A model generated the notes under the pieces. The model was not told the DNA's origin and made no database searches. It worked only from the letters and a program-made list of their open reading frames with translations. From Mytilus californianus (lineage: Eukaryota), in contig NW_026262679.1 of the NCBI RefSeq assembly GCF_021869535.1, positions 89,838,001 through 89,902,000 on the forward strand: a stretch of DNA of 64,000 nucleotides. Reading direction: 5' to 3'. This document shows, piece by piece, positions 45,916-60,914 of the stretch. The position numbers and the translations under genes were made by a program. The stretch's first letter is position 1; each line of letters begins with the position of its first letter.

Positions 45916-47733
45916 CATATGAAGTGTCTTCCTGAATGTCGTTAACCACTGGTCATCTTGAAACTTCGAATAAAACCCAAAGTTTCCAAACGGTCAAACA
46001 TATTTTGCTATTTCTTAAAAATACCACTAGAATTATAACATCAGCATACATTTGTAGAGTAATTTACAAAATGCAAAATCTTAACATGTTCAGGAGAAAC
46101 TGGTGAATCGACCACATAACATTGTGGGCTACTACCAGTTATCTATTGGTTAAAAACAAAGTGCATGGGATTTTAAATTTTCATTTTGTATTGTTTCCCG
46201 GAATATCATTTGATTTTTTTTTGTTCACCTACTGTAATATATGTTATGTATATAGCATTAACATGGCAAGATTTAAAACTATTGTTCATCGGCTTCAGCA
46301 TTCATCTTTTTTTTCTTCTTACAGGAATAAGAAATAAATAATTTTGTCTATTGTTCTGCACTGTATCTGAGCATTGGTTTCACTTAAAATTCATAACTTA
46401 GTATACATTGAACAGTAAAACTCCTATGAGATCCTTAAAACTAGTTAAATCAATGGGTAACATGATACTATTGGCGTAAGGAATTTTCGTATCGTGTATG
46501 CTTATGTCCTTTCAAAACAGGTTTTTTTTTAATAATGCACAGCGAATATGGCACAGAAATTCTACTCAATATCAATAATATCAGGCTGCATGATATAAAA
46601 GACAGAACATGATATATCTGATTTGGTTGCGTTTACTTTATTTTACCTGGACATGCTGCAATTTAAGTTAATACATTAAAATAAGTCTTGTTCATTATTC
46701 TCAAGAATTCGTTGTATAAACAGATTGGGACACCTGTTTATTGTAAAAGCTTTTATGCTGTCATTTAGTTTTCGTTTGATTATGTTTCTTGTTCCGTTTC
46801 TGTCTCATTGATATATAAGTCACTCCTCTTTTAATTTCAAGTTTAAAACTTATTAATTGACAGCGTAACTTAATTCGTAAATGGCAAAAGAAAATGAAAA
46901 TAAACGGCAAATTGTTTTAGTTCGTGGCACTAAATCACTACGTGCAATCGAATAAAAAAGGAATAGAACAACTGCGCCATTGTTGCTGTTATTCATCTCA
47001 AAGTCACAGTTAGGCCTTTGTAAACATGTCGTGAATCTAGAAGTAAAAATAAACAAAAATTGCGCATAATTTATGAAATTATAATCCAATAAAATAATTG
47101 AATAATTACTGAGACAAAGGTTTTGAAATACAACATTAATCATGGAGTGTTCAATGCATGTGGTAACACCAAAAACATTTTCTGATCATATTTGAGTGTG
47201 TGTAGTATTTGGTTTTAGCTTATTAAGACAAAGACCCCTTTATGGAGTTTTATTGACTTTTGCAAGGACAGAAGTAGGTCAAATATCATTAAATCAAATC
47301 TGTTCCAAAATAAAAGATTTCTGAGTGGATTTTATAGATATTAGATATTCGCTTTCCTTATTTTACGAGATAACTGAAAAATTCGGGAGCCTCCCTTGAA
47401 ATGTGAATGCAGGTACAACTGATTATCTTTTGTGTGATTGCGTCGTTTGGTTGTTGTCTTGTGAACGAATGTCGGAAGCCGTTGTTTTTTATCCATAATA
47501 TTAGTGGTTGTGGTTTAAGTAAGTCAAACACTTTTTAAGCATAGCAATCTGGGCCCGGTTGTTCAAAAGTGTCGTTAAGCTAACGCAGTCGTTAAAGTGT
47601 CGTTAGAGAGTCGTTACATTTAACAAATTTGTTAACTGTTGTTCAAAAAATTTAACGACAAAAGTAATGTTAAAGAGTCGTTAACTTTAACAACTTCTGG
47701 TAGGTCGATTAAATATCTAAGTTATTGTTAAAT

Positions 47734-50700
47734 ATGGCCGCCTTCATGCAAGTACCTGTTCCACCTCACAGAAAAGAAAGGCATTTTCGCCTCAAAGATG
47801 ACCTTTCTTTGGATTTGTCAAATGAGGAATTAAGAGAAAGGTACAGATTTGGTAGAGAAGGAATTATGTTCATTTCCAACCTAGTTAGCAATGATGTATC
47901 AAGAAAAACAAAGAGAAACCATGCCCTAACTGTGCCACAGCAAGTCATGGTAACCATGAGATTTTTAGCCACAGGCAGTTTCTTGCAAGTAGTTGGAGAC
48001 ACAATAGGTAAGATTTCATTATATATTTATCATATGTCATTTAAAATTAAGTAAACATTGCCAATGTGGTGTTAATCGACTGCTATAATTATCTTTGGCT
48101 GATGTTTGAATGATACTTTCAATTTGTTGATTTTCTAAATAATATATAATCAAACGGTGAATACACATTTTATTTTTGTACTTTATTGATCTCCAAAATT
48201 GTATGTTGTTGTTTTGGGTCTGTTTACAGGTTTGCACAAGGGAACTGTCTCACGTATTGTGTCTGATGTTTTGAATTCATTATGTGACAAACGGGATGAG
48301 TTTATCAAGTGGCCGAGAAATGTTGATGAAACAAGAGGAGATTTTTACCGTCTAAGTGGTTTCCCAAATGTGCTAGGGGCAATAGATGGGACACACGTCT
48401 GTATCCAGGCTCCATCAGAAGATGAACCATCATTCGTGAATAGGAAAGGGGTACATTCTGTCAATGTGCAGCCTGTTTGTGATGCCAGAGGTAAAACATT
48501 TCTTTCTGATCTAATAGAGATTTCCAATAAAATGACATACGTACCTAACTCGACGTACGCACGTAACGGGACCGGTTATTACTAACCTATTAATTTTGTT
48601 AAATGCGTCATTCAAGTTTTAACTCATTATTCCTAAACTACAAAACACATTCAGGATAAATTTTATCAATATCAAGTATTTCTAATATGATGAAAAACGA
48701 AAGAAATCATTATTTTTATATATCACGTGATTATTGAGATTCCCGCCAAAACTTCACTGTCATAAGACCACGTATATACACGTATCTTTACCTATCATAC
48801 GATTGACTTGAGTTGTCTTTCATGGTTTTGACCATGACTTTGGTTTTTGATATACTTTGCAAATGAACCTTTTATTATTTAATATTTGACATGCTTTTAT
48901 TTGTCGTTATCAGATTGGTGTCCTTTTTTCCTTTCGTCCCTTAATGTTTTATAATATTTAATTTCCTTGGGTATTTATTATATGACAGAGATTTTTCTAG
49001 CAATTTCAGAAATATCGAATTGAAAGTGTTAGTCAGAATTTGTCTCTGTTAAAGTTGATAACTGGGATTGAATCATACTTTATTAAGCATCATTTCAAAC
49101 GATCTCTTCTTCTGCAGTTAATCTTGTTTATTTACAATCTCCGATTTTTTTCCCAAGGGAAAACGTTCGACAAAGGGATGTGTATATTTAAAAATAATTA
49201 ATACAGGTCTTGTACTTCTTTAAATTTTAATAGTTGACATACACTTTTCTTTCAAATAAAAGTCAACTAACATAAAAAAAAAAGAATTTTGTAATTAATA
49301 ATGATATATGTAAATAAATGTGTACACCAATTCGTTATATAGATTGTAATTTGGAAGGTGTACTTGATTAGCAATTGCTGACTAATCTGCATATAAACAT
49401 TGACCGCTGTGGATAGTAAAATATCAATTAATAATTCATAGTAATTGGCTAAAAAAATGTCCTGTCCCAGGTATCTCTGATTAAAAAAGGACGAGAATGC
49501 CAATTTATACACTTTTAAGACAACTATATTGCCACTTCAGTCTTTACAGTAATTTTCTTTTTAAAATGTACTTTTAATAAGTAAGGCTTGATATTGTCAT
49601 AGTTGTTTTTGGATTAAGACAACTCTTTCTAATCCAATTAGAAGTGGATTCTAACACTATCACATATTGATTGAGTTAAGCAAAAATTTTTAGTTTCAAT
49701 TGTTGTCTCGCATTAGAGGTATATATTTATATATAAAAGTTAAACTCTACGACATATCCATGCATATGATCACCATTGAAGGTGATACACGGCTGAAAAC
49801 ACATTTTATATCAATAATTACTTTGAATATGTATATATGTGTAAACCAAGCTCTCTGAAGGAAGGTTTTTACAGGTTGTTCTTATGTCGTGCTGTTGCAC
49901 CACTGTCCCAGGCTTAGGGGGTGGGGGTTGAGCACTCATTCTTTATGGCCTGTCTCATGTCAGGAGCCTGTGGTCCACTTGTTGTCGTTGGTTCATATCT
50001 GTTATATTTGTTTTTCGTAACTTGTTTTGTTTTAAATCAGGCCGGTAGTTTTCTCAATTGAATTGTTTCATATTTTTCAAGTTGGTTCCTTTTATAGTCG
50101 ACTATACGGTATGGATTTTTCTCCTTGATGAAGGCCGTACGGTTGCCTATCATTGCTTACATCAACTTCATTTCTTATTGGCAATCATACCATATCTCCT
50201 TATTTTTTTGGGGGTTCTTTTTAACTAAATCCGTTTAATATTCTCAGGTAATTTAACATTTAAGAATCAGCTTTCAGTACCTGGGGGTACTTTAAGATCG
50301 GTACTCTGTGTCTTTCATCATAAAAATGTAATTGTTTTGGGCTTAATTCAATATTGATTAGTTGAGCTAATTCCAACTGAATTTTACAGTTTTTTTTTTC
50401 TTATATTGTGCTGTTACACCAGAGTGTTGAGCGCTGGTAAACGCGTTTAATCAGGCCAAATTCTAGATAGGCTTTCCCAAGTCAGATGCTTTCAATTCAG
50501 TGTATGTCGTTGGTTACTTTCTGTCATTTTTGTGTTAATTTTACTCTTGTAAAAATGTTTATTTTCGTTTGAAAAGTTTACATTTTCAAAGTCAATGTCA
50601 TATATACTAGTATCTGATAATACGGTATGAGTATTTGCTTATTGTTGACGACAGCACGAGCCACTGTAGTCGTAATTCACACCATTTGGACTCTGTTTGA

Positions 50701-53700
50701 TAGTTTGACCCCAGGAGTGTAAGGAATAAATCGAAAAAAGAATGCATGCTAAGCATACTAATGCTTTTGAAGAGAAAATTGAAAATATTTGTTGAACGGA
50801 CAGACTGGTGGACGGACAGACAGGGTGATTGTAATATGAGTGCGGGTACAATATTTTGTCAGTGTATGTATCTTAGATGCTAGTGGTAAGGAAGTCTGGA
50901 TCAAAACGGGGTAATCTTTACTTGCTAAAAAATATTTTTTACTATTTAGAATAATAATTGCATGCCTACTGGATATTAGTACAATAGCAAGTCACAAGGA
51001 TAAAGGAAGCTGTGAAACACCATTTTACAATAAAAACTAAGCTTTTTGATACAAAGAAACAAGGAGAAAAATCAAACAAATTATGCAACAAAAAGTGATA
51101 TCAAAACAAAACAAGTGTTGCTAGAATAATAATATATGCACTTAAAGCATAAAATATATAAACAAGTTTTTATTGAATATGGAATTGACTGGTAGCAGGC
51201 TTGCCTCGATTACGGGTTCAATTATTTTGTTGAACAATTCGATCCAGCGAATCGCTATCATTTCATCATCCTTAATATATATGTAATATTTATCGCTGGA
51301 TATAAGACATACATCAGTATCATCATCATCATAAATATTATAGCTTGAGGCTTAATCTTCGTCGTATTTATTATAGCTTGTGAGTTTTATAGCTTGAGGC
51401 TAAATTCTTATCTGATATTTTAGCCAATTTATGTCGAGAACTTATTTTATGCATGCATCTCTTTGCTACATAATTTTTATAAATGTCCAAGTTAAAGCCA
51501 ATAGAGATCATAGAAGTATGCTTATCAAATGATCATGTCTACTCATAATTATAACAGTAAGAAAGGGATTGACTCGTCCGACTAAAACGAAGCACAAAAA
51601 CAGCAATTACTAGTATTTCAAAATAAACTCCATGTACCGATCTTACAGTATTCACAGCTACTGAACACTCTTAAAAACAACTACAACTAATAAATACAGA
51701 ATAATTATCCAGTCTAGAATATTAATCAATTATTTCGTACTGTTACACCACTGTCCCAGGTAAGTGGGCCCGTTAACATGTTTAACTCTGACACATTATG
51801 TATGGCGGTGACTGTCCCAAGTAAGGAGCCTGTAATTCAGTGGTTATCATTTGTAGCTGTGCTTTCGTTCATTTTTTTGTACATTAATTAGGCCGTTAGT
51901 TTTATCGTTTTTGTTGTTTTACATTTGTCATTTTGTGACCTCTTACAGCTGAGTATTCGGTATGGGCTTTGCTCATTGTTGAAGATCGTACGGTGGCCTA
52001 TAGTTGTTAATTTCTGTGTCATTTGGTCTCTTGTGAAGAGTTGTCTCATTGGTAATCATACTACATCTTCTTTTTTGTACATATCACAAATTAAGTAAAA
52101 AAGTACATAAACACTATAGAAAAGCAAGACCTTGTGTCATGTCAAAAGCACAGAGTGTCTGTAGGACCATTAGTGTTCATAATTGTATAGCAGATTATAT
52201 GTAGTTTCTATAAAATGTAATGATAATTTATCAGTAAAAGATACCTGATTATTTGTTAGTGGGATTATATATAACTTAATAAATGAATATTTATATATTA
52301 AAAGAAACATCAGAAACAAGAATATGTGTCCATTAGATCACACGCCAGTATCACATTTCCGTGTTAAGTGAGCTCAAAATCCAGGAAAAATCCAATTCAG
52401 TATGTAGTCTTAAACTTTTAAATCTCGTGCGAGATGTCTAATGTTCAAACATTGTTGTTTTTAAAACGTATTTATCAAAGTCAAACGACAATCATTTAAT
52501 TTTTTTTTGTGCTATACAATTTGTGATTATGGCCGGATCCAAGATATTTGAAAGAGGGCGTAGTTCCCGATAATTGAATTTATACTGCCGAGCGAAGCAA
52601 CGCGAAAAAATAATGGACGATTTTATACTAAACATTTGTATAGATAACGTGGAAAATTGAGATGTTCAAAATTACTTGGCGATCGAAAGGGGGGAGTACG
52701 CCCTCTACCCCTGTATCCGCGAATGCACGTTTAGGTATACATGATCAAAATCTCGTCCCATGCATTATTATAGTTAAAGACTAAAAAGTACTTTTGATAA
52801 ATGTATCAATGATATGAATTTCTGCCGACGTCAAATTATCTTGAATCAAATTATAGTATATAATTATTCTTAAAAGTTAGTCGCGTACACCTTTTACATT
52901 CGGGTGTGTTGGAATACACTTTTTAAACGTTAAAACTTATAAAAACAAAAAAAGAGATAGCCTTCTCGCTTCGGATTTCATTATTTCAATATTTTCATGC
53001 TAAATGTTTACTTGGTAGTTTTAAAATTCATGTGTTGAGAAGAACTGAAATATGGGTCAAGTGAAAAGACAAGAAATGATGGGTGTATTTGATTATAAGT
53101 TGCTAGCTTATTTATTCCATTAAAATATTTTTGTCAATAAAATCATTAAACATTTAATAACAAAATATTTGAAGATTAAAAAAAGTAGTTGGGGTTGATT
53201 TTGACATTAAGTTTATATCAGCAAAAAATGCGTGTTCAAAGAGCAAAAAATGCATGCAGTGTATGCTCCCCTCCGTCATGCTTTGATGCAATAGGACGGT
53301 ATACGTTGATTTAGGTCGGTTATGTCGAGTAAAGTCATTTTATTGGAAATCTCTAATATGACATTGACCTTCATAACATAATAAACTGGTTTCAACTTTT
53401 TTGTATGACTGGGACCCCTATAGTCTGTTTCTCACATAGTAATTACTTTCACTTTCACTCCGGTGTAAACTTTCATCTAGGACATAAAAGTATGAGTTTA
53501 TATGGTTTACCTACTAAAGGTAAATTAAAATATTGGTAAGTCAAATATTAAAAGACGTTATTTGTCATTTTTTCTTCAATGAGAAAAAGATTCTGTTCAG
53601 GGGCCCAGCCATTTTCAAAAAAAGGGGGGGGGGGGGCAACCTAGGATAAAGGGGAGTTCCAACCATATGTACCCATTCAAATGCACTGATAGTCCTAAAA

Positions 53701-56700
53701 AGGGGGGTTTCCTGGAACCCCAACCCAGACCCGCCACTGCTGTTATAGATACATTTCTTAAATTTCCCCTTTTAATCCAAAAGAAAGAAAGATTAACCTA
53801 GGTTACCCTACAGTACAATTTATAATTTTTAATATTGCTCTCATGTGGATCAATTATAGAAAATAAAGATGCATTAGCACAATTGATTTAATTAATATTA
53901 AAATCATGTTTTCCTAGTTTGAAACAATATTATTGAGTCATAATTTGTGGGTCTATACATGCATTTTACATCAGTTATCATGGTTATTCATTGTGTTTTC
54001 TGAAATTTAAAGCAAATATACACTTGTAGTTGGAAATGTTTGGACACCCCCTTTTAAGATTACCATTACAAGACTTTTAGAAAATGGATTCAAATAAATT
54101 TTATTTTTTAGTCCACTGTTGCATGATCCCAAATAATCCTCTCTTTGAAACTCTTGCTACACCTCTTAATTAGAAAAATATAATAATTAATAAAGATAAT
54201 TTGTTACATATAAATATGTTTATGCTATTACAACATTTCTATCTTCTTTGCATTATATATAATCTTCTATTATTTGCAGGTAAATTCACAAACATAAATG
54301 CAAACTGGCCAGGTAGCAGTCATGATTCCCACATATTCAGGACTTCACAAGTATGTATTTTATTGCCATGTTGGTCATCTTTATTTAGTCATATTCCCTT
54401 TCAAGCACTATATATTAACAGTAAGATACTTCTTATTTTCTCAATACAAATTCAAAATCTCTTATCTTGGATTGGTCACCACTGCGGGAAGTCAAAATCT
54501 TCTTCTTGGACATAAACCCCCTATTTTTATTGCTTGTCATCATTAATATTTTTTCCCTTTTTGTCATTACACATAAAGGTGTAAAAATGCCAATCTGAGG
54601 ACTTTTGAATTTCATTTCCAAATAATGAATTTATCATTTGATATTTATATATAATTAATCATTTTAGCATAATAAAATTTTGATTAATGAAAGAAAGGCT
54701 AATACATTATATATTAAATTGCAATTGTATTTCCATATCATAACAGATAAGAAAAGGATTTATATGTTAAAAAAATCTATTATTCCATATATAAAGAAGT
54801 TTTAAGTGGGAGCTATGTTAAAAAAAAAATATTGAGATACAATAACTTAAAAAAGAATATAGAAATATCTTTAGTAAATGATATATATGTTAAAAAATCA
54901 ATTATTCTATATATATAAAGAAGCAAACAATTAGTTTTAAGAGGTGGCTATGTTAAAAAAATATTGATATACCATAACTGAAAAAGGAATATAGAAAAAT
55001 AGTCTTGCTCAATATTATTTAAGGTAAATAGTGTAACTCCTCCGTGAAGCTGAATATATACATTTAAATTATATAAATGGTAGTTTTAACCAAATATATG
55101 ATGTAAAAAGAAATATAAACCTTTATGTATAGGTGTGTACCTACATGGAACAAAATGGTGGATGGGCAAATGGTGTACTGCTTGGGGATAGTGGTTATCC
55201 TTGTCGTCCATTTTTGATGACCCCATACAAGAATCCTGTACAAGATCATCAGAAAAAGTACAATAGATGCCACTGTTCAACAAGAAGTGTGATTGAGAGA
55301 ACATTTGGGAGGCTGAAGAGACGGTTCCATATATTACACTCAGAGGTAAAGCATAAAAAAAAATCTTTAAACAAATGATCAGTAATAAAACTAAAAAACA
55401 CAGCTGATAAAAAATAATGTGGATATACATGTACTTTTATCAGGTGCACATTTCAACACCAAAATTCCCCACTACAAAATAAATTTCATGACCAAAAAAA
55501 AAACATTTGTGGGGGCAAAATAAGGGGTGGGCTAATGGGATATATTTGGGACAATGAATGTTGGTGTATTCATTAGAAACAAACTATTTTTTTATATGAC
55601 TACATAAACTTTGCATTCATATTTTTGACCTCAAGGTTCAATGCCACAATAGGAAGGTAGGGATAGGTAATGGGTGTTTTGGTCCCAACTGTTTAGGAAT
55701 AAGGGGCCGAAAAGGGGCCAGAACAAGCATTTTTCTAGTTTTCCAGACAATAACTTGTTTATTATTGTATGGATCTCTCTGAAGTTGTACTACAAGGTTC
55801 TATATCACAAAGGGAAGTTTGATTAAAAGAAAAAGTTGTGTAATTAAGTATATATAGTCAGAAAACTGAATAATCCAGCAATTTATTTATAAAAAACTTG
55901 CCCCCATCAGCAGGTGAATGGTCAGTGCCACTAGCACATCACTTTGACAACATAAATTTGAAACTTTCAACTAATATATCAAAGTACAACATCATTATGT
56001 AGTATTATGTTATATTACACTCTAAAGTGGGTTTTTTTGTCGAGCCTGCGACATAGGGATAGTGATCCGGCGGCGGCTACGGCGGCTTTAGGTAACTTCT
56101 TAAAAGCTTTATATTTTAGAAGGTGGAAAGCCTGGATGCTTCATACTTTTTATATAGATGCCTTATGTTACGAAGTTTCCGTCTGTCACATGTCCATTGT
56201 CCTTGACCTCATTTCCATGGTTCATTGACTACTTGAAAAAAAAAGTTGTGATTTTTTGTAATGTTAATTTCTCTCTTATTATGAGTAATAGGATAACTAT
56301 ATTTGGTATGTGCGTACAGACAGTCAGACAGTTTTCACTTGACCTCGACCTCATTTCATGGATCAGTGAACAAGGTTAAGTTTTGGTGGTCAAGTCCATA
56401 TCTCAGATACTATAAGCAATAGGTCTAGTTATTGGTGTATGGAAGGATTGTAAGGTGTACATGTCCAACTGGCAGGTGTCATCTGACTTTGACCTCATTT
56501 TCACGGTTCATTGCTCAGTGTTAAGATTATGTGTTTCAGTCTATTTTTCTTAAACTATAAGCAATAGGTCAGCTATATTTGTTGTATGGAAGGATTGTAA
56601 GCTGTTCATGTCTGCCTGGCATGGTTCATCTGACCTTGACCTCATTTTCACGATTCATTGGTCAATGTTTAGTTTTCTTGGTTAAATCTGTTTCTAATAG

Positions 56701-57355
56701 AAACTATAAGCAATAGGGCAACTATATTTAGTGTATTGAATGATTGTAAGGTGTACATGTATTTCTCGTTTGGTTTATATGACATTGACTTCATTTTCTT
56801 GGATCATGTTTATGTAATAGTTGTAGTAAAGCTTTCATTTAGGACTATCAACATAATATCAATGGTTAGTAAAGAAGGCGAGACATTTCAGCTTGTGCAC
56901 TCTTGTTAAAGCTTACTTGGTGTGAGCAAAGGCTCCCATGTTGAATGCCATACTGTAAACTATTATATTTGATTACTTTAACAACAGAGAATGGTCTCAT
57001 TGCCACTCATACCACAGCTTCTTATTTTTATACATTGTATATACATATATTCAATGTCAACTTTTGAAACTTTATAGAATACTAATTTAGCAAAATGCTG
57101 ATATGAAGACGATTATTAAGTGTAACATATTAAGTTATGATTTTTTTTAAATTTCAGATAAGAATGACACCTGGCAAGGCATGCAAAATAATAATTGCTT
57201 GTGCTATTCTCCACAATATATGCATTTTGTTGAATGAACCTGACATTGAAGATGACGGAGTAATTGTAGGCAATGATGGTGATCTTGGGGAACATTTCAA
57301 TGGTCATCAAGATGGAAGAGCTGCAACTCATACACATCATCTACAGTTCTCTTAG
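47734..57355 (+). CDS. Harbinger (HARBI1-like, DDE_Tnp_4) transposase, 5 exons, 338 aa
   Basis: Exons 47734-48007, 48230-48490, 54280-54350, 55133-55345 and 57158-57355, all GT-AG and in phase (1017 nt, no internal stop). Motifs [61 protein letters not shown] triad intact. Confidence 0.92.
49870..50208 (+). mobile_element. Family A copy nested in transposase intron 2
   Basis: caccactgtcccagg...ggcaatcataccatatctcc. Confidence 0.7.
51735..52078 (+). mobile_element. Family A copy nested in transposase intron 2
   Basis: ctgttacaccactgtcccagg...gagttgtctcattggtaatcatactacatcttc. Confidence 0.7.
53597..53740. mobile_element. Short G-run MITE nested in transposase intron 2
   Basis: caggggcccagcc...G-run...gacccgccactg; CAGGGG/CCACTG ends. 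Confidence 0.45.
56039..56907 (+). mobile_element. HINE/Helentron-like element with ~145-bp internal tandem repeats, nested in transposase intron 4
   Basis: Follows a T-run, starts gtcgagcctgcgac..(GGC)n and ends ...gtgcactcttgtt. The tgacctcattt..gg(t/a)tca motif recurs at ~56205, 56345, 56490, 56636 and 56790. Confidence 0.65.
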
Positions 57356-59457
57356 CTTTCTTCTTCTGCTTACTCTCACTGAAATATAGATTTTTTACTA
57401 TTTGGTAATTCTATTAATTTCACTTAATATTAGTAGATGTGTTAATACTATATCATTGCCAATGAGACAATTATCCAAAGAGCCCAAAGGAGGCAGATTT
57501 GATCAAATTCATATCACCGTACACAGCCTTTAACAATGAGGAAACCCCATACTGTTTAGTCTCTTATAAAAGAAATGACATGACATGACAATATGTGAAA
57601 CATTAAATAAAAAAACAACATGATTAATGACAAATAAGCTAAAAACAAATATTTAACAGACAGCAACCCAAGTCATTCTTAATTGGGACAGGCATTAACG
57701 AAATGTGGTAATAGTAAACGTGCTTGTGAGAACTCAATTGTTCTTTCCTAATCAGGGTCAATGGTGTAATATATTACAAAATAACATATCTGAGAACAAA
57801 CTTAAAATCCGTACGAAAAAGTTATTCTCATCAGACTCGCTAAACAACTAGTGTAAATACATCAAAGACAGTGCTGTATTTTTACATATGAAACATATAC
57901 CTGGGTTTTGGTGGTTGCTGAGTGCAAGTCTGTATTTGTGCAGGTACTGGTAGGCTGGCAGGAACAGTCGCACTAGGATGTGTTAACTCTTCATTTCTCT
58001 GGTGAATCTGCTCAAGTCTCCTTATCCAGATATCTTCCACAGAAGATGGTAAATCTAAAAATTGAAAATTGGTTTACATCAAGATTTTGCTCAGTTCAGT
58101 GCATGATATGTGTTTAGTATATGTTTTTGAAAATTAATTCATATTTGCATTTGAATGTGTTGGTTATGATACACAGATGCAGATATAGAGTGGTCTAGGG
58201 TCCCGCTTATGGGGCCTCATGTTTGGTTTATGCGAAGACTTTTTACAGGCCCATTTCTAACACTTCCTTTATGAAGCCCCTTTTTCAAAATCCTGAATAG
58301 GCCTCTTAATACTATTGTACAAGATTCAAAATGAATGGACAACCAAATAAATAGAACAACATAGATTGGGGAAGGGTATTGTAAAAATTAATAACTGAAT
58401 ATAAGTTATAATTCTATCAATAAGTGTGACAAATAGAACAATAATAGAAAATATATGAAAATCATTTGATTTAACTTATATGAAATGCAGAATTGAAAAA
58501 AAATTACTAAACCAATTTAATTATCTACGTAATAAATACCTTCAACAGTCTGGCATGTGGGAGTAGCATTCAGTGCTGGAACTGGTGAGACAGGTACTGC
58601 AGTATATATCTGGTCAGATGTTATGCTGTCTGAAATGTAAAAAGACTTAATAATTTTGTTTTGTTTGATTTAAAGAACTGAATTGATAGTTTATACTCTT
58701 CATAATAGAACCATTTCTAATGGAATATTGCACATGAATGATGGTATACAATTGTCTCTTTCTTCCCAAGTTTTCATATCAATATATAAATACATGTATA
58801 TGACAGTAGAATAGACAGATCTTGAGTACATGTAAAATCACATAGTGACTGACATGTCATGAAACATCTTATGATGTAATGAAGTTTAGAATAGTGCATA
58901 AATCACAAGTATTTTTGAATGCATGAAATAATTTATAAAGCAGTTATTATACAAATGTATTGGCTTACATAAAAAGAATTAATTTCTATGGACATATCAT
59001 CCCTTATTGATCAATTTACTGACAAAGTCATACCATATAAAATATATTTATTCCTGTTACTCTCCATTTACTGACCCATGCATGGTCACCGTAAATTATG
59101 TTATAACTGCATTTAAACATTTTATTAACAATCCTTGTTTTCTATAAACCTTCATTAAGAACTGCAATTTTAAAAACCATGCATATGAAACTGTTGTTTA
59201 TATCTTTAATACTAATAAGTTACTATTTTAAAGGTTCCAGATATAATTAAATCAGGTAACAAATTGATTGCACTTCTTTGAAGAAACTTGAATTTCATGC
59301 ATAATAATAAAGTCTCATAGGCACTAAAAACACATCTACTTATATTTATAAAATAAAATTTCTTTAGTAATTTATAGTCATGTGTATGAATTATGTACTT
59401 TATATAGATACACACCTTCTGAATGTCTGCTATTACATGTTTCTTGCTGAGAAACCC
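57297..59457 (-). CDS. Harbinger second (accessory) gene, partial: four in-phase exons; N-terminal Myb/SANT part not found
   Basis: Minus-strand exons 59416-59457 (42 nt), 58540-58629 (90), 57901-58054 (154) and 57297-57378 (82), with GT-AG and consistent phases 1-1-2. Product is S/T/P-rich and ends ...[25 protein letters not shown] candidate ATG (AAAATGG) lies at 59779 but no clean donor was found. Confidence 0.65.
57452..57770 (-). mobile_element. Decayed family A copy in an accessory-gene intron
   Basis: cattgccaatgagacaa...gggacaggca matches family A loosely. Confidence 0.55.
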
Positions 59458-60914
59458 CTGAAAAAAAAAATCAAATGATAAGTTCTAAAATAATTAGGCA
59501 CAAAGAAAGATAACTCAATTATGTTTTTATACTGCATGCTATTTTGAAAAGGACTATAAACATGTCACAATATCCGTGGCAAATGATTCATTGCAAGTGC
59601 CTTGAAGATGGTATTAACAATTTAATATTATTTTTATAATTATTATATGTTCAAGTAAATCAATTTTGTATGGAATTTTTACCAAACTTAATTTTTTTTA
59701 ATTTTTAAAAAAAAATTTTCAATGTGGCAAATGTTGATATAAGGGGCATTGCAAAATTGGAGGTTTGTTGTTCAGCCATTTTTAAACAGGAAGTGGAGGA
59801 ATTTTAGGTAAAAATTTTGGAATTATGGGAAAATGTTAAAAAAAACCAGTTACTAAATTTTTTAACAAGTAGTTAGTTAACTCAGTCGTTAAATATTTTT
59901 GAACAACATAATTTAACGCAGTAATTAGCTAACAACAATGTTAAAATTTAACGAGTCGTTAGGCTTAACTTGTCGTTAGCTTAACGACACTTTTGAACAA
60001 CCGGGCCCTGAGCTTAGAAATAATACTTTATATCATAGTCTGTAAATGTAATCAGATAAGAAAAAAAAAAGAAAGATGAAACCTTTACCCGGTAAATAAT
60101 TTGTGGGAAATTGTATTGTTAGTCAGTAAAAAAACACGTCCTCACCATAAATTATGAATACTTAGTAGTCTATCATGCATTGCAACTAATTCGCCTGATT
60201 GGTCAAGGACCCAGGTAAAATGGTATGAGTATTATGTTGACAGCTAATATATTGGCGGGAACGTCAGTAAGCTAAATTATGCATACCCGTCATAGCTAGT
60301 TTATCGCTGATCAAATGTCATAAATCGATAAAGAAAATAAAATAAGGTAAAAAAGATGATGAAATGGTGATAGATTGACAATATTATCGTTGTAAATATG
60401 CCTGTCTACTGTTATATTTCTGGTATATCATGAACGACATTTTGGTTTAAAAAGCAATGTTAATTTATTATTAATTAAGTCAGCTTTTTTATTCAAGTTC
60501 GGTCTTCAGTAGCTTATTTTATACAATACTGAGAACATCGCTGAAGAGACATACCTTATAAAATTAGTAAAACTGGTATCGTTAATGTTATGCAAGATTT
60601 ATAGATCATTGATGGTATTTCTAACGAGAGGGTGTTACTCAGTCAACGAAGGGCAATTTTTGAAGGATCAAAGGTAATTCTGTTCATTGCTATTTTAGAT
60701 TTGATGTATATATGTTATATTGAATTTGTAAAATCACTGAATTGATAAATGATTTTATAAAATCCCTGAATTTGATCAGGGATTTTACAAAATCCCTGAA
60801 ATAATTAAGACATTTTTTATTACAGATCCACTGATTCAATACAGTGATTTTGTAAAATAATCAATCTTTTGTTTAAATAATTCTTTAAGAAAAGACAAAA
60901 GACTACACCAGTAA

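What the first reader, a model, noticed from the sequence alone, without database searches (positions are those of the whole stretch)
57297..57378. Transposase and accessory gene overlap tail-to-tail by 59 coding bases, probably a deletion fusion
Seen: the + strand transposase ends ...[16 protein letters not shown] (57355). The - strand last exon reads ...[18 protein letters not shown] (57297). Each protein looks family-typical up to the same point, a shared CTG at 57321-57323, and then reads a short antisense tail of the other gene. Inference: a microhomology-mediated deletion removed both native C-termini, UTRs and poly(A) signals while leaving both frames open. Transcripts would now overlap as natural antisense RNA, a possible self-silencing switch. 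A genuinely evolved overlap is the alternative.
Basis: partly seen in the sequence, partly recalled or inferred. Interest (0 to 1): 0.7.

Follow-up and report, generated by a model that had tools for sequence, protein, structure and literature searches.

The report
Deletion-fused gene tails in Harbinger transposon
One copy of a two-gene Harbinger "jumping gene" in a mussel-like genome lost about 300 bases between its two convergent genes, so their ends now overlap; this is ordinary decay of a single defective copy, not an evolved overlap or a shown regulatory switch.

Summary
The window holds a 12.5-kb PIF/Harbinger DNA transposon (47552-60007, 34-nt TIRs, CTG target duplication). Its spliced transposase gene lies on + and a Myb/SANT-like accessory gene on -, and the two converge.

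At the CTG at 57321-57323 this copy lacks about 300 bp (304 bp in its closest relative). All 15 other copies in the same genome that retain both flanks keep that stretch, and so does the closest relative, in a Mytilus coruscus assembly. The lost piece held three things: the last 12 codons of the transposase, a 113-121-nt spacer with poly(A) signals, and the last 46-49 codons of the accessory gene. The break has exactly 3 nt of microhomology, and the junction is unique in the genome.

The short new tails (10 and 7 codons) are what chance gives in AT-rich DNA. A second private deletion (754 bp, TTG microhomology, 59757-59759) removed the accessory gene's Myb-domain exon. A 4.8-kb element sits in a transposase intron. 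So this is an internally deleted, non-autonomous copy of a familiar kind. The "self-silencing switch" idea has no support here and cannot be tested without RNA data. Interest is low.

The parts
47549..47551 (.). Left target-site duplication, CTG
   Evidence: The same CTG lies at 60008-60010. Across the other copies every element end is flanked by CTG or CAG, i.e. a CWG target.
47552..47585 (+). Left terminal inverted repeat
   Evidence: Inverted repeat I1 pairs with 59974-60007. Similarity to the other copies starts here.
47734..48007 (+). Transposase exon 1 (ATG at 47734)
   Evidence: Open frame followed by a GT donor at 48008. 96-98% DNA identity to type A copies.
48230..48490 (+). Transposase exon 2 (start of the DDE_Tnp_4 domain, first catalytic Asp motif)
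   Evidence: Pfam PF13359, profile positions 1-42. AG/GT splice borders are visible.
48517..53351 (.). Nested 4.8-kb insertion in transposase intron 2, with its own 20-25-nt TIRs and a TAATA duplication
   Evidence: Inverted repeat I3. Absent from all other copies. The empty site is seen in L021.
54280..54350 (+). Transposase exon 3
   Evidence: Pfam PF13359, profile positions 40-65. Splice borders.
55133..55345 (+). Transposase exon 4 (GDSGY and ERTFG motifs)
   Evidence: Pfam PF13359, profile positions 75-145, E 1.2e-15. Splice borders.
57158..57355 (+). Transposase exon 5. Native sequence runs to 57322/57323, then a 10-codon foreign tail and a TAG stop
57321..57323 (.). Deletion junction 1: a single CTG where relatives have CTG + 299-301 nt + CTG
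   Evidence: The junction-spanning 70-mer is unique in the genome.
57297..57378 (-). Accessory-gene last exon (E5). Native sequence runs down to 57321, then a 7-codon foreign tail and a TGA stop
   Evidence: The same exon start (..|SE.K..) is used in the predicted proteins P0001 and P0005.
57901..58054 (-). Accessory-gene exon 4
   Evidence: tblastn hits of P0005 and P0001. Splice borders.
58540..58629 (-). Accessory-gene exon 3
   Evidence: Conserved in frame in distant copies. Matches P0001 residues 126-158 in type A copies. Splice borders.
59416..59457 (-). Accessory-gene exon 2
   Evidence: P0005 residues 84-100 hit this exon. Splice borders.
59757..59759 (.). Deletion junction 2: a single TTG where the closest relative has TTG + 751 nt + TTG. 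It removes the Myb-domain exon after codon 6
   Evidence: The junction-spanning 74-mer is unique in the genome.
59760..59779 (-). Remnant of accessory exon 1 (ATG at 59779-59777, MAEQQT...)
   Evidence: Aligns to the start of the Myb exon in L027 and L052.
59974..60007 (-). Right terminal inverted repeat
60008..60010 (.). Right target-site duplication, CTG

Best explanation
The locus is one copy of a multi-copy PIF/Harbinger DNA transposon with intron-containing, convergent transposase and Myb/SANT-like genes. In this copy alone, a single deletion of about 300 bp (304 bp measured against the closest relative) joined two CTG triplets. It removed the transposase's last 12 codons and stop, the 113-121-nt intergenic spacer with its poly(A) signals, and the accessory gene's last 46-49 codons and stop. 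Each frame then runs on into the antisense of the other gene until the first chance stop, which produces the 59-base overlap. A second private deletion (754 bp, between two TTGs) took out the Myb-domain exon, and an unrelated 4.8-kb element landed in an intron. The copy is therefore an internally deleted, non-autonomous derivative. Shown: the deletions, their breakpoints, that they are private to this copy, and what they removed. Inferred: the deletions arose by end joining or abortive gap repair, as is usual for cut-and-paste elements. Also inferred: the transposase is impaired, because the lost tail carries a motif that is conserved across distant Harbinger transposases.
For: Extra sequence in other copies. 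All 15 other genomic copies that keep both flanks have 267-303 extra bases between window positions 57323 and 57321.

Closest relative. L052 lies on a contig of assembly GCA_011752425.2, an accession cited by Mytilus coruscus papers. It is about 96% identical to the window element and has CTG + 301 nt + CTG, with the 40 nt to the left identical to the window.

Uniqueness. The junction-spanning 70-mer is unique in the 1.65-Gb genome, and no undeleted copy of this lineage exists there.

Native ends in relatives. The transposase ends ...GRAVRDHISTTFFNH*. The accessory protein runs on from ...VYELQ for 46-49 more residues. The stop-to-stop spacer is 121 nt in type A copies, so there is no native coding overlap.

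Tail motif. A G-x-a-x-(V/I)R-x-x-(L/I)-x-x-x-F motif just before the stop recurs in most of the distant intronless Harbinger transposases of the same genome that were examined.

Accessory protein. It is identified as Myb_DNA-bind_5 (PF13873) through the full-length relatives P0001 and P0009. Its Myb exon is present in type A copies and in L052 but absent from the window.

Microhomology. Both junctions have exactly 3 nt. The chance of at least 3 nt is 0.07 for one junction and 0.005 for both.

Literature. Both proteins are required for Harbinger transposition (PMC9392472, PMC9710019). Internal deletions at short microhomologies are the usual origin of non-autonomous DNA elements (PMC3814204).
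Against: The transposase frame of this copy is otherwise remarkably clean. It has 327 open codons, canonical splice sites, only 5 private codon changes, perfect TIRs and an intact target duplication. A truncated but expressed protein therefore cannot be excluded. No expression or population data were available, so fixation, timing and any transcript overlap are unknown. Three bases of microhomology do not discriminate between end joining, replication slippage and gap repair.
Confidence: 0.9

Rival explanations
1. The tail-to-tail coding overlap is the native, evolved arrangement of this transposon family.
For: The two genes are natively convergent and close together, with a 113-121-nt spacer.
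Against: No other copy has the junction. Every other copy that retains both flanks separates the two stops by a spacer and carries longer, mutually conserved C-termini.
Confidence: 0.01
2. The missing ~300 bp is an assembly or consensus error, or one haplotype of a polymorphism, rather than a fixed deletion.
For: There is only one assembly of this locus to look at, and nothing here tests read support.
Against: The junction is clean, with flanks colinear on both sides at 95-100% identity to L052. A second deletion of the same style lies 2.4 kb away. No tandem repeat spans the break that would invite collapse: TRF finds only the 147-bp array at 56405-56798.
Confidence: 0.05
3. The deletion created a functional element: convergent read-through transcripts form double-stranded RNA that silences this copy or, in trans, related Harbinger copies.
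For: After the deletion the next + strand poly(A) signal is about 250 nt beyond the stop (57602-57611). No canonical signal lies within 600 nt on the - strand, so transcripts, if made, would overlap. The upstream region and ATG of the accessory gene are retained.
Against: There are no RNA data. The native spacer is so short that some 3' overlap is likely normal for the family. The copy has no daughters and shows no sign of selection. It is one of several lesions in a decaying copy.
Confidence: 0.03
4. The tail-swapped transposase is expressed and acts as a defective competitor, titrating the Myb-like partner or binding element ends without catalysing transposition, in the manner of deletion-derived repressors of other DNA transposons.
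For: The frame is open for 338 codons with the N-terminal region and catalytic motifs in place. The Myb-like partner is reported to bind the transposase N-terminus (PMC9392472).
Against: This is purely inferential: there is no expression evidence, it is a single copy, and intron 2 is enlarged by 4.8 kb.
Confidence: 0.02

Closest known systems
Autonomous PIF/Harbinger elements (e.g. zebrafish Harbinger3_DR, rice Ping/PIF)
   Same: A DDE_Tnp_4 transposase plus a separate Myb/SANT-like DNA-binding protein, TIRs of 25-50 bp and a 3-bp target duplication (PMC9179366).
   Different: Here both genes have introns and the target duplication is CWG. This particular copy lacks the Myb exon, both native C-termini and the intergenic spacer.
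Internally deleted non-autonomous derivatives of cut-and-paste transposons (Ac/Ds, P, Tc1, mariner-derived MITEs) formed by abortive gap repair or end joining
   Same: Intact ends, internal segments missing relative to autonomous relatives, and short microhomology at the breakpoints (PMC3814204).
   Different: The deleted copy has not amplified, since both junctions are unique. The deletions are small, so most of the element remains, including an open transposase frame.
Vertebrate HARBI1/NAIF1 and other co-domesticated Harbinger gene pairs
   Same: The same two protein families. The accessory protein has the Myb_DNA-bind_5 domain, the NAIF1-type family.
   Different: This locus keeps its TIRs and target duplication, belongs to a multi-copy family and is losing coding sequence. 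Nothing indicates domestication.

Membership tests
PIF/Harbinger DNA transposon | Transposase with a DDE_Tnp_4 (PF13359) domain | tested here: met
   Exons 2, 3 and 4 hit PF13359 at profile positions 1-42, 40-65 and 75-145. The best E-value is 1.2e-15.
PIF/Harbinger DNA transposon | Second gene encoding a Myb/SANT-like DNA-binding protein | tested here: not met
   Met for the family: P0001 (277 aa, 94% identical to the type A last exon) has PF13873 at residues 14-89. Not met for this copy: the Myb exon is deleted at 59757-59759.
PIF/Harbinger DNA transposon | Terminal inverted repeats and a 3-bp target-site duplication | tested here: met
   TIRs at 47552-47585 and 59974-60007 are 34/34 complementary and flanked by CTG on both sides. 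All copies show CWG.
PIF/Harbinger DNA transposon | Catalytic D-D-E residues present | tested here: inconclusive
   The motifs AIDGTH, LLGDSGY and SVIERTFG are present in exons 2 and 4, inside the Pfam-matched stretches. The residues were assigned by eye only, with no structural alignment. The joined protein was not folded.
Internal-deletion (non-autonomous) derivative of a DNA transposon | Same termini as full-length relatives, with an internal segment missing | tested here: met
   304 bp and 754 bp are missing relative to L052 and to all genomic copies, while the ends are intact.
Internal-deletion (non-autonomous) derivative of a DNA transposon | Short microhomology or filler at the breakpoints | tested here: met
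   Exactly 3 nt at each junction (CTG and TTG), with no filler. The chance probability for both together is 0.005.
Internal-deletion (non-autonomous) derivative of a DNA transposon | Mobilised or amplified as a deleted family | tested here: not met
   Both junction-spanning probes are unique in the genome.
Natural antisense (convergently overlapping) gene pair | Overlap conserved among relatives | tested here: not met
   Relatives have a 113-121-nt spacer between the stops.
Natural antisense (convergently overlapping) gene pair | Overlapping transcripts from both strands | not testable with these tools
   No RNA data were available. Only the positions of poly(A) signals could be read.

The most novel reading that the evidence does not exclude
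The deletion removed the terminators of both convergent genes. Read-through transcription from the two retained promoters might then make double-stranded RNA across 57297-57600. If so, this single defective copy would act as a trans-acting trigger of small-RNA silencing for the related Harbinger lineages in the genome.
Probability: 0.03. Interest if true: 0.5.

Novelty: already known. Interest (0 to 1): 0.12.

Why it matters
It matters little beyond annotation. The locus should be annotated as a defective Harbinger copy with two internal deletions, not as two overlapping genes. The work yields a clean, dated example of how a nearly intact autonomous DNA transposon becomes non-autonomous through small deletions at 3-nt microhomologies. 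It also defines the native gene models, the CWG target duplication and the conserved transposase C-terminal motif for this mussel Harbinger family. Only if the locus proved to emit junction-spanning small RNAs would it bear on how transposon silencing is triggered.

Tried and rejected
- Pfam scans of the - strand exons, both from the window and from type A copies, gave nothing. The protein was identified only after the representative search with the native last exon found full-length relatives.
- A global MAFFT alignment misplaced the window's right flank across the gap. Anchored local alignments were used instead.
- I first read the canonical donor of accessory exon 4 as mutated. Re-reading the DNA showed it is intact: CCCAG|GT at 57900-57899.
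- An apparent further indel at 57424-57427 relative to the C143 and C154 copies is not a lesion of the window, because L052 is colinear there.
- A search with L052's flank, meant to test orthology, hit only a satellite array and was uninformative.
- The key experimental paper on Harbinger3_DR (PMC2290759) is not held, so its results are cited only second-hand via PMC9392472 and PMC9710019.
- The window is not human-like: 33% G+C, with mussel-type repeats.

Full report
**What is at the coordinates**

The + strand exon 57158-57355 reads ...[17 protein letters not shown]...[16 protein letters not shown]. The - strand stretch 57378-57297 lies behind an AG at 57380-57379 and reads ...[18 protein letters not shown].

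**The element**

The window is AT-rich eukaryotic DNA (about 33% G+C) from a 1.65-Gb assembly.

- Ends. Inverted repeats at 47552-47585 and 59974-60007 are flanked by CTG on both sides. Every other copy has CTG or CAG next to each end, so the target duplication is CWG.
- Transposase gene. It lies on the + strand in five exons: 47734-48007, 48230-48490, 54280-54350, 55133-55345 and 57158-57355. All have GT-AG borders and an open frame of 338 codons. Exons 2-4 match Pfam DDE_Tnp_4.
- Nested insertion. Intron 2 holds a 4.8-kb insertion (48517-53351) with its own TIRs and a TAATA duplication. It is absent from all relatives.

**The - strand gene**

Pfam gave nothing for its exons. I therefore sent the native last exon of a type A copy (L022:7187-7381:-) to the representative search.

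- P0001 (277 aa, 94% identical over that exon) and P0009 carry an N-terminal Myb_DNA-bind_5 domain, PF13873. The accessory gene is thus the expected Harbinger Myb/SANT-like partner.
- Mapping P0001 and P0005 back with tblastn, together with the splice sites, gives the window's exons: E2 59457-59416, E3 58629-58540, E4 58054-57901 and E5 57378-57297.

**The deletion**

A search of the window's own genome with 57100-57600 shows that other copies align to 57100-57323 and then to 57321-57427 about 300 bp further on.

- Local alignments across 16 other copies confirm this. Each of the 15 that retain both flanks has 267-303 extra bases between the flanks. The C13:14.98-Mb copy (L005/L034) has no match to the right flank.
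- In the nearest genomic copies (C143) the sequence is ...GAGCTG|TTAGAG... on the left and ...GACACTG|CAACTC... on the right, with 299 nt between the two CTGs.
- The closest relative of all is L052. It lies on a contig of assembly GCA_011752425.2, found through P0005. That accession is cited by Mytilus coruscus papers.
- L052 is about 96% identical to the window element along its length, sits in unrelated flanks, and has CTG + 301 nt + CTG, so the loss is 304 bp. The 40 nt left of the break are identical to the window.
- A 70-mer across the junction occurs once in the genome. The native L052 segment has no better full-length match in this genome than 91%.
- The deletion is therefore private to this copy, and the microhomology is exactly 3 nt.

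**What was lost**

- Transposase. In relatives it ends ...GRAVRDHISTTFFNH*, which is 12 residues after the break.
- Accessory protein. It continues from ...VYELQ with a coiled-coil-like tail of 46 residues in type A copies or 49 in L052.
- Spacer. The two stops are 121 nt apart in type A copies and 113 nt apart in L052, with AATAAA signals in between.
- There is thus no native coding overlap.
- Tail motif. The lost transposase tail carries a motif, G-x-a-x-(V/I)R-x-x-(L/I)-x-x-x-F close to the stop. It recurs in most of the distant, intronless Harbinger transposases from the same genome that I examined. I infer that the tail matters for function.
- New tails. They are 10 and 7 codons long and are antisense read-on. 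With 0.078 stops per codon the expected run is 12.8 codons, so the open frames carry no signal.

**State of the copy**

- Second deletion. It joins two TTGs at 59757-59759. It removes 754 bp, measured against L052, including the whole Myb-domain exon after codon 6 and its donor site. This junction is also unique. The accessory gene of this copy therefore cannot make a DNA-binding partner.
- Transposase frame. By contrast it is nearly pristine. It has 5 private codon changes. Against two unbroken type A copies it shows 19 synonymous versus 14-15 non-synonymous codon differences. Of the changes it shares with L052 against type A, 15 are synonymous and 8 are not. In contrast, 10 of 13 other copies have exon indels.
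- Age. Private substitutions amount to about 1.5%, the same as in L052.
- Overall, the copy looks like a recently autonomous element disabled by a few lesions.

**Mechanism**

Both deletions have 3 nt of microhomology and no filler. The chance of at least 3 nt is 0.07 per junction and 0.005 for both.

This fits the usual origin of internally deleted DNA transposons, namely end joining or abortive gap repair (PMC3814204). It cannot be distinguished from replication slippage.

Both Harbinger proteins are needed for transposition, and the Myb-like protein recruits and imports the transposase (PMC9392472, PMC9710019). This copy could therefore move only with help in trans, and its own transposase lacks the conserved tail.

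**The silencing idea**

After the deletion the next + strand poly(A) signal is at 57602-57611. No canonical signal lies within 600 nt on the - strand. Transcripts, if made, would therefore overlap.

That is all that can be said. There are no RNA data. The native spacer is already short enough that some overlap is probably normal. Nothing suggests selection on this arrangement.

**Verdict**

Functional significance is unsupported. This is a known kind of object, a defective internally deleted transposon copy, and is of low interest.

Noticed in passing
window 59757-59779: A second private deletion (754 bp against L052, between two TTGs) removed the Myb-domain exon of the accessory gene. Only the ATG and six codons remain. 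The junction is unique in the genome.
   Followed up: yes
window 48517-53351: A nested 4.8-kb element sits in transposase intron 2. It has perfect 20-nt TIRs (GAGATTTCCAATAAAATGAC) and a 5-bp TAATA duplication. The empty site is seen in all other copies. Its superfamily was not determined.
   Followed up: partly
window 47552-60007 versus L021-L031, L024/L025/L033 and L052: Similarity to other copies is mosaic. The 5' kilobase is 96-98% identical to the young 'type A' copies and the middle is 92-93% identical. The 3' half is only 74-85% identical to type A but 88-92% to 'type B' and about 96% to L052 (gap-aware alignment). This suggests recombination between Harbinger lineages or very uneven constraint.
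   Followed up: partly
window 56405-56798: A 147-bp tandem repeat (2.7 copies, 79% matches) lies inside transposase intron 4. It is also present in type A copies.
   Followed up: partly
window 57451-57600: This stretch of accessory intron 4 matches dozens of places genome-wide at 74-78% identity, so it is an unrelated interspersed repeat. A piece of it is inverted at 52034-52060, inside the nested element.
   Followed up: no
L024 and L033 (G000:C143 at 26.92 Mb and 26.53 Mb): Two type B copies are 99.7% identical over 7.35 kb that reaches beyond the mapped left end of the element. This indicates a segmental or assembly duplication about 393 kb apart.
   Followed up: partly
L052:9850-10700: The closest relative's own Myb exon is frameshifted. 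This explains why its annotated protein P0005 starts at an internal Met and scores only weakly for PF13873.
   Followed up: partly
L052:8900-9620: The flank of the related element is a satellite with a period of about 536 bp. That satellite forms long arrays on several contigs of the window's genome (C2 at 67.0 and 67.8 Mb, C13 at 17.4 Mb, C154 at 50.6 Mb).
   Followed up: no
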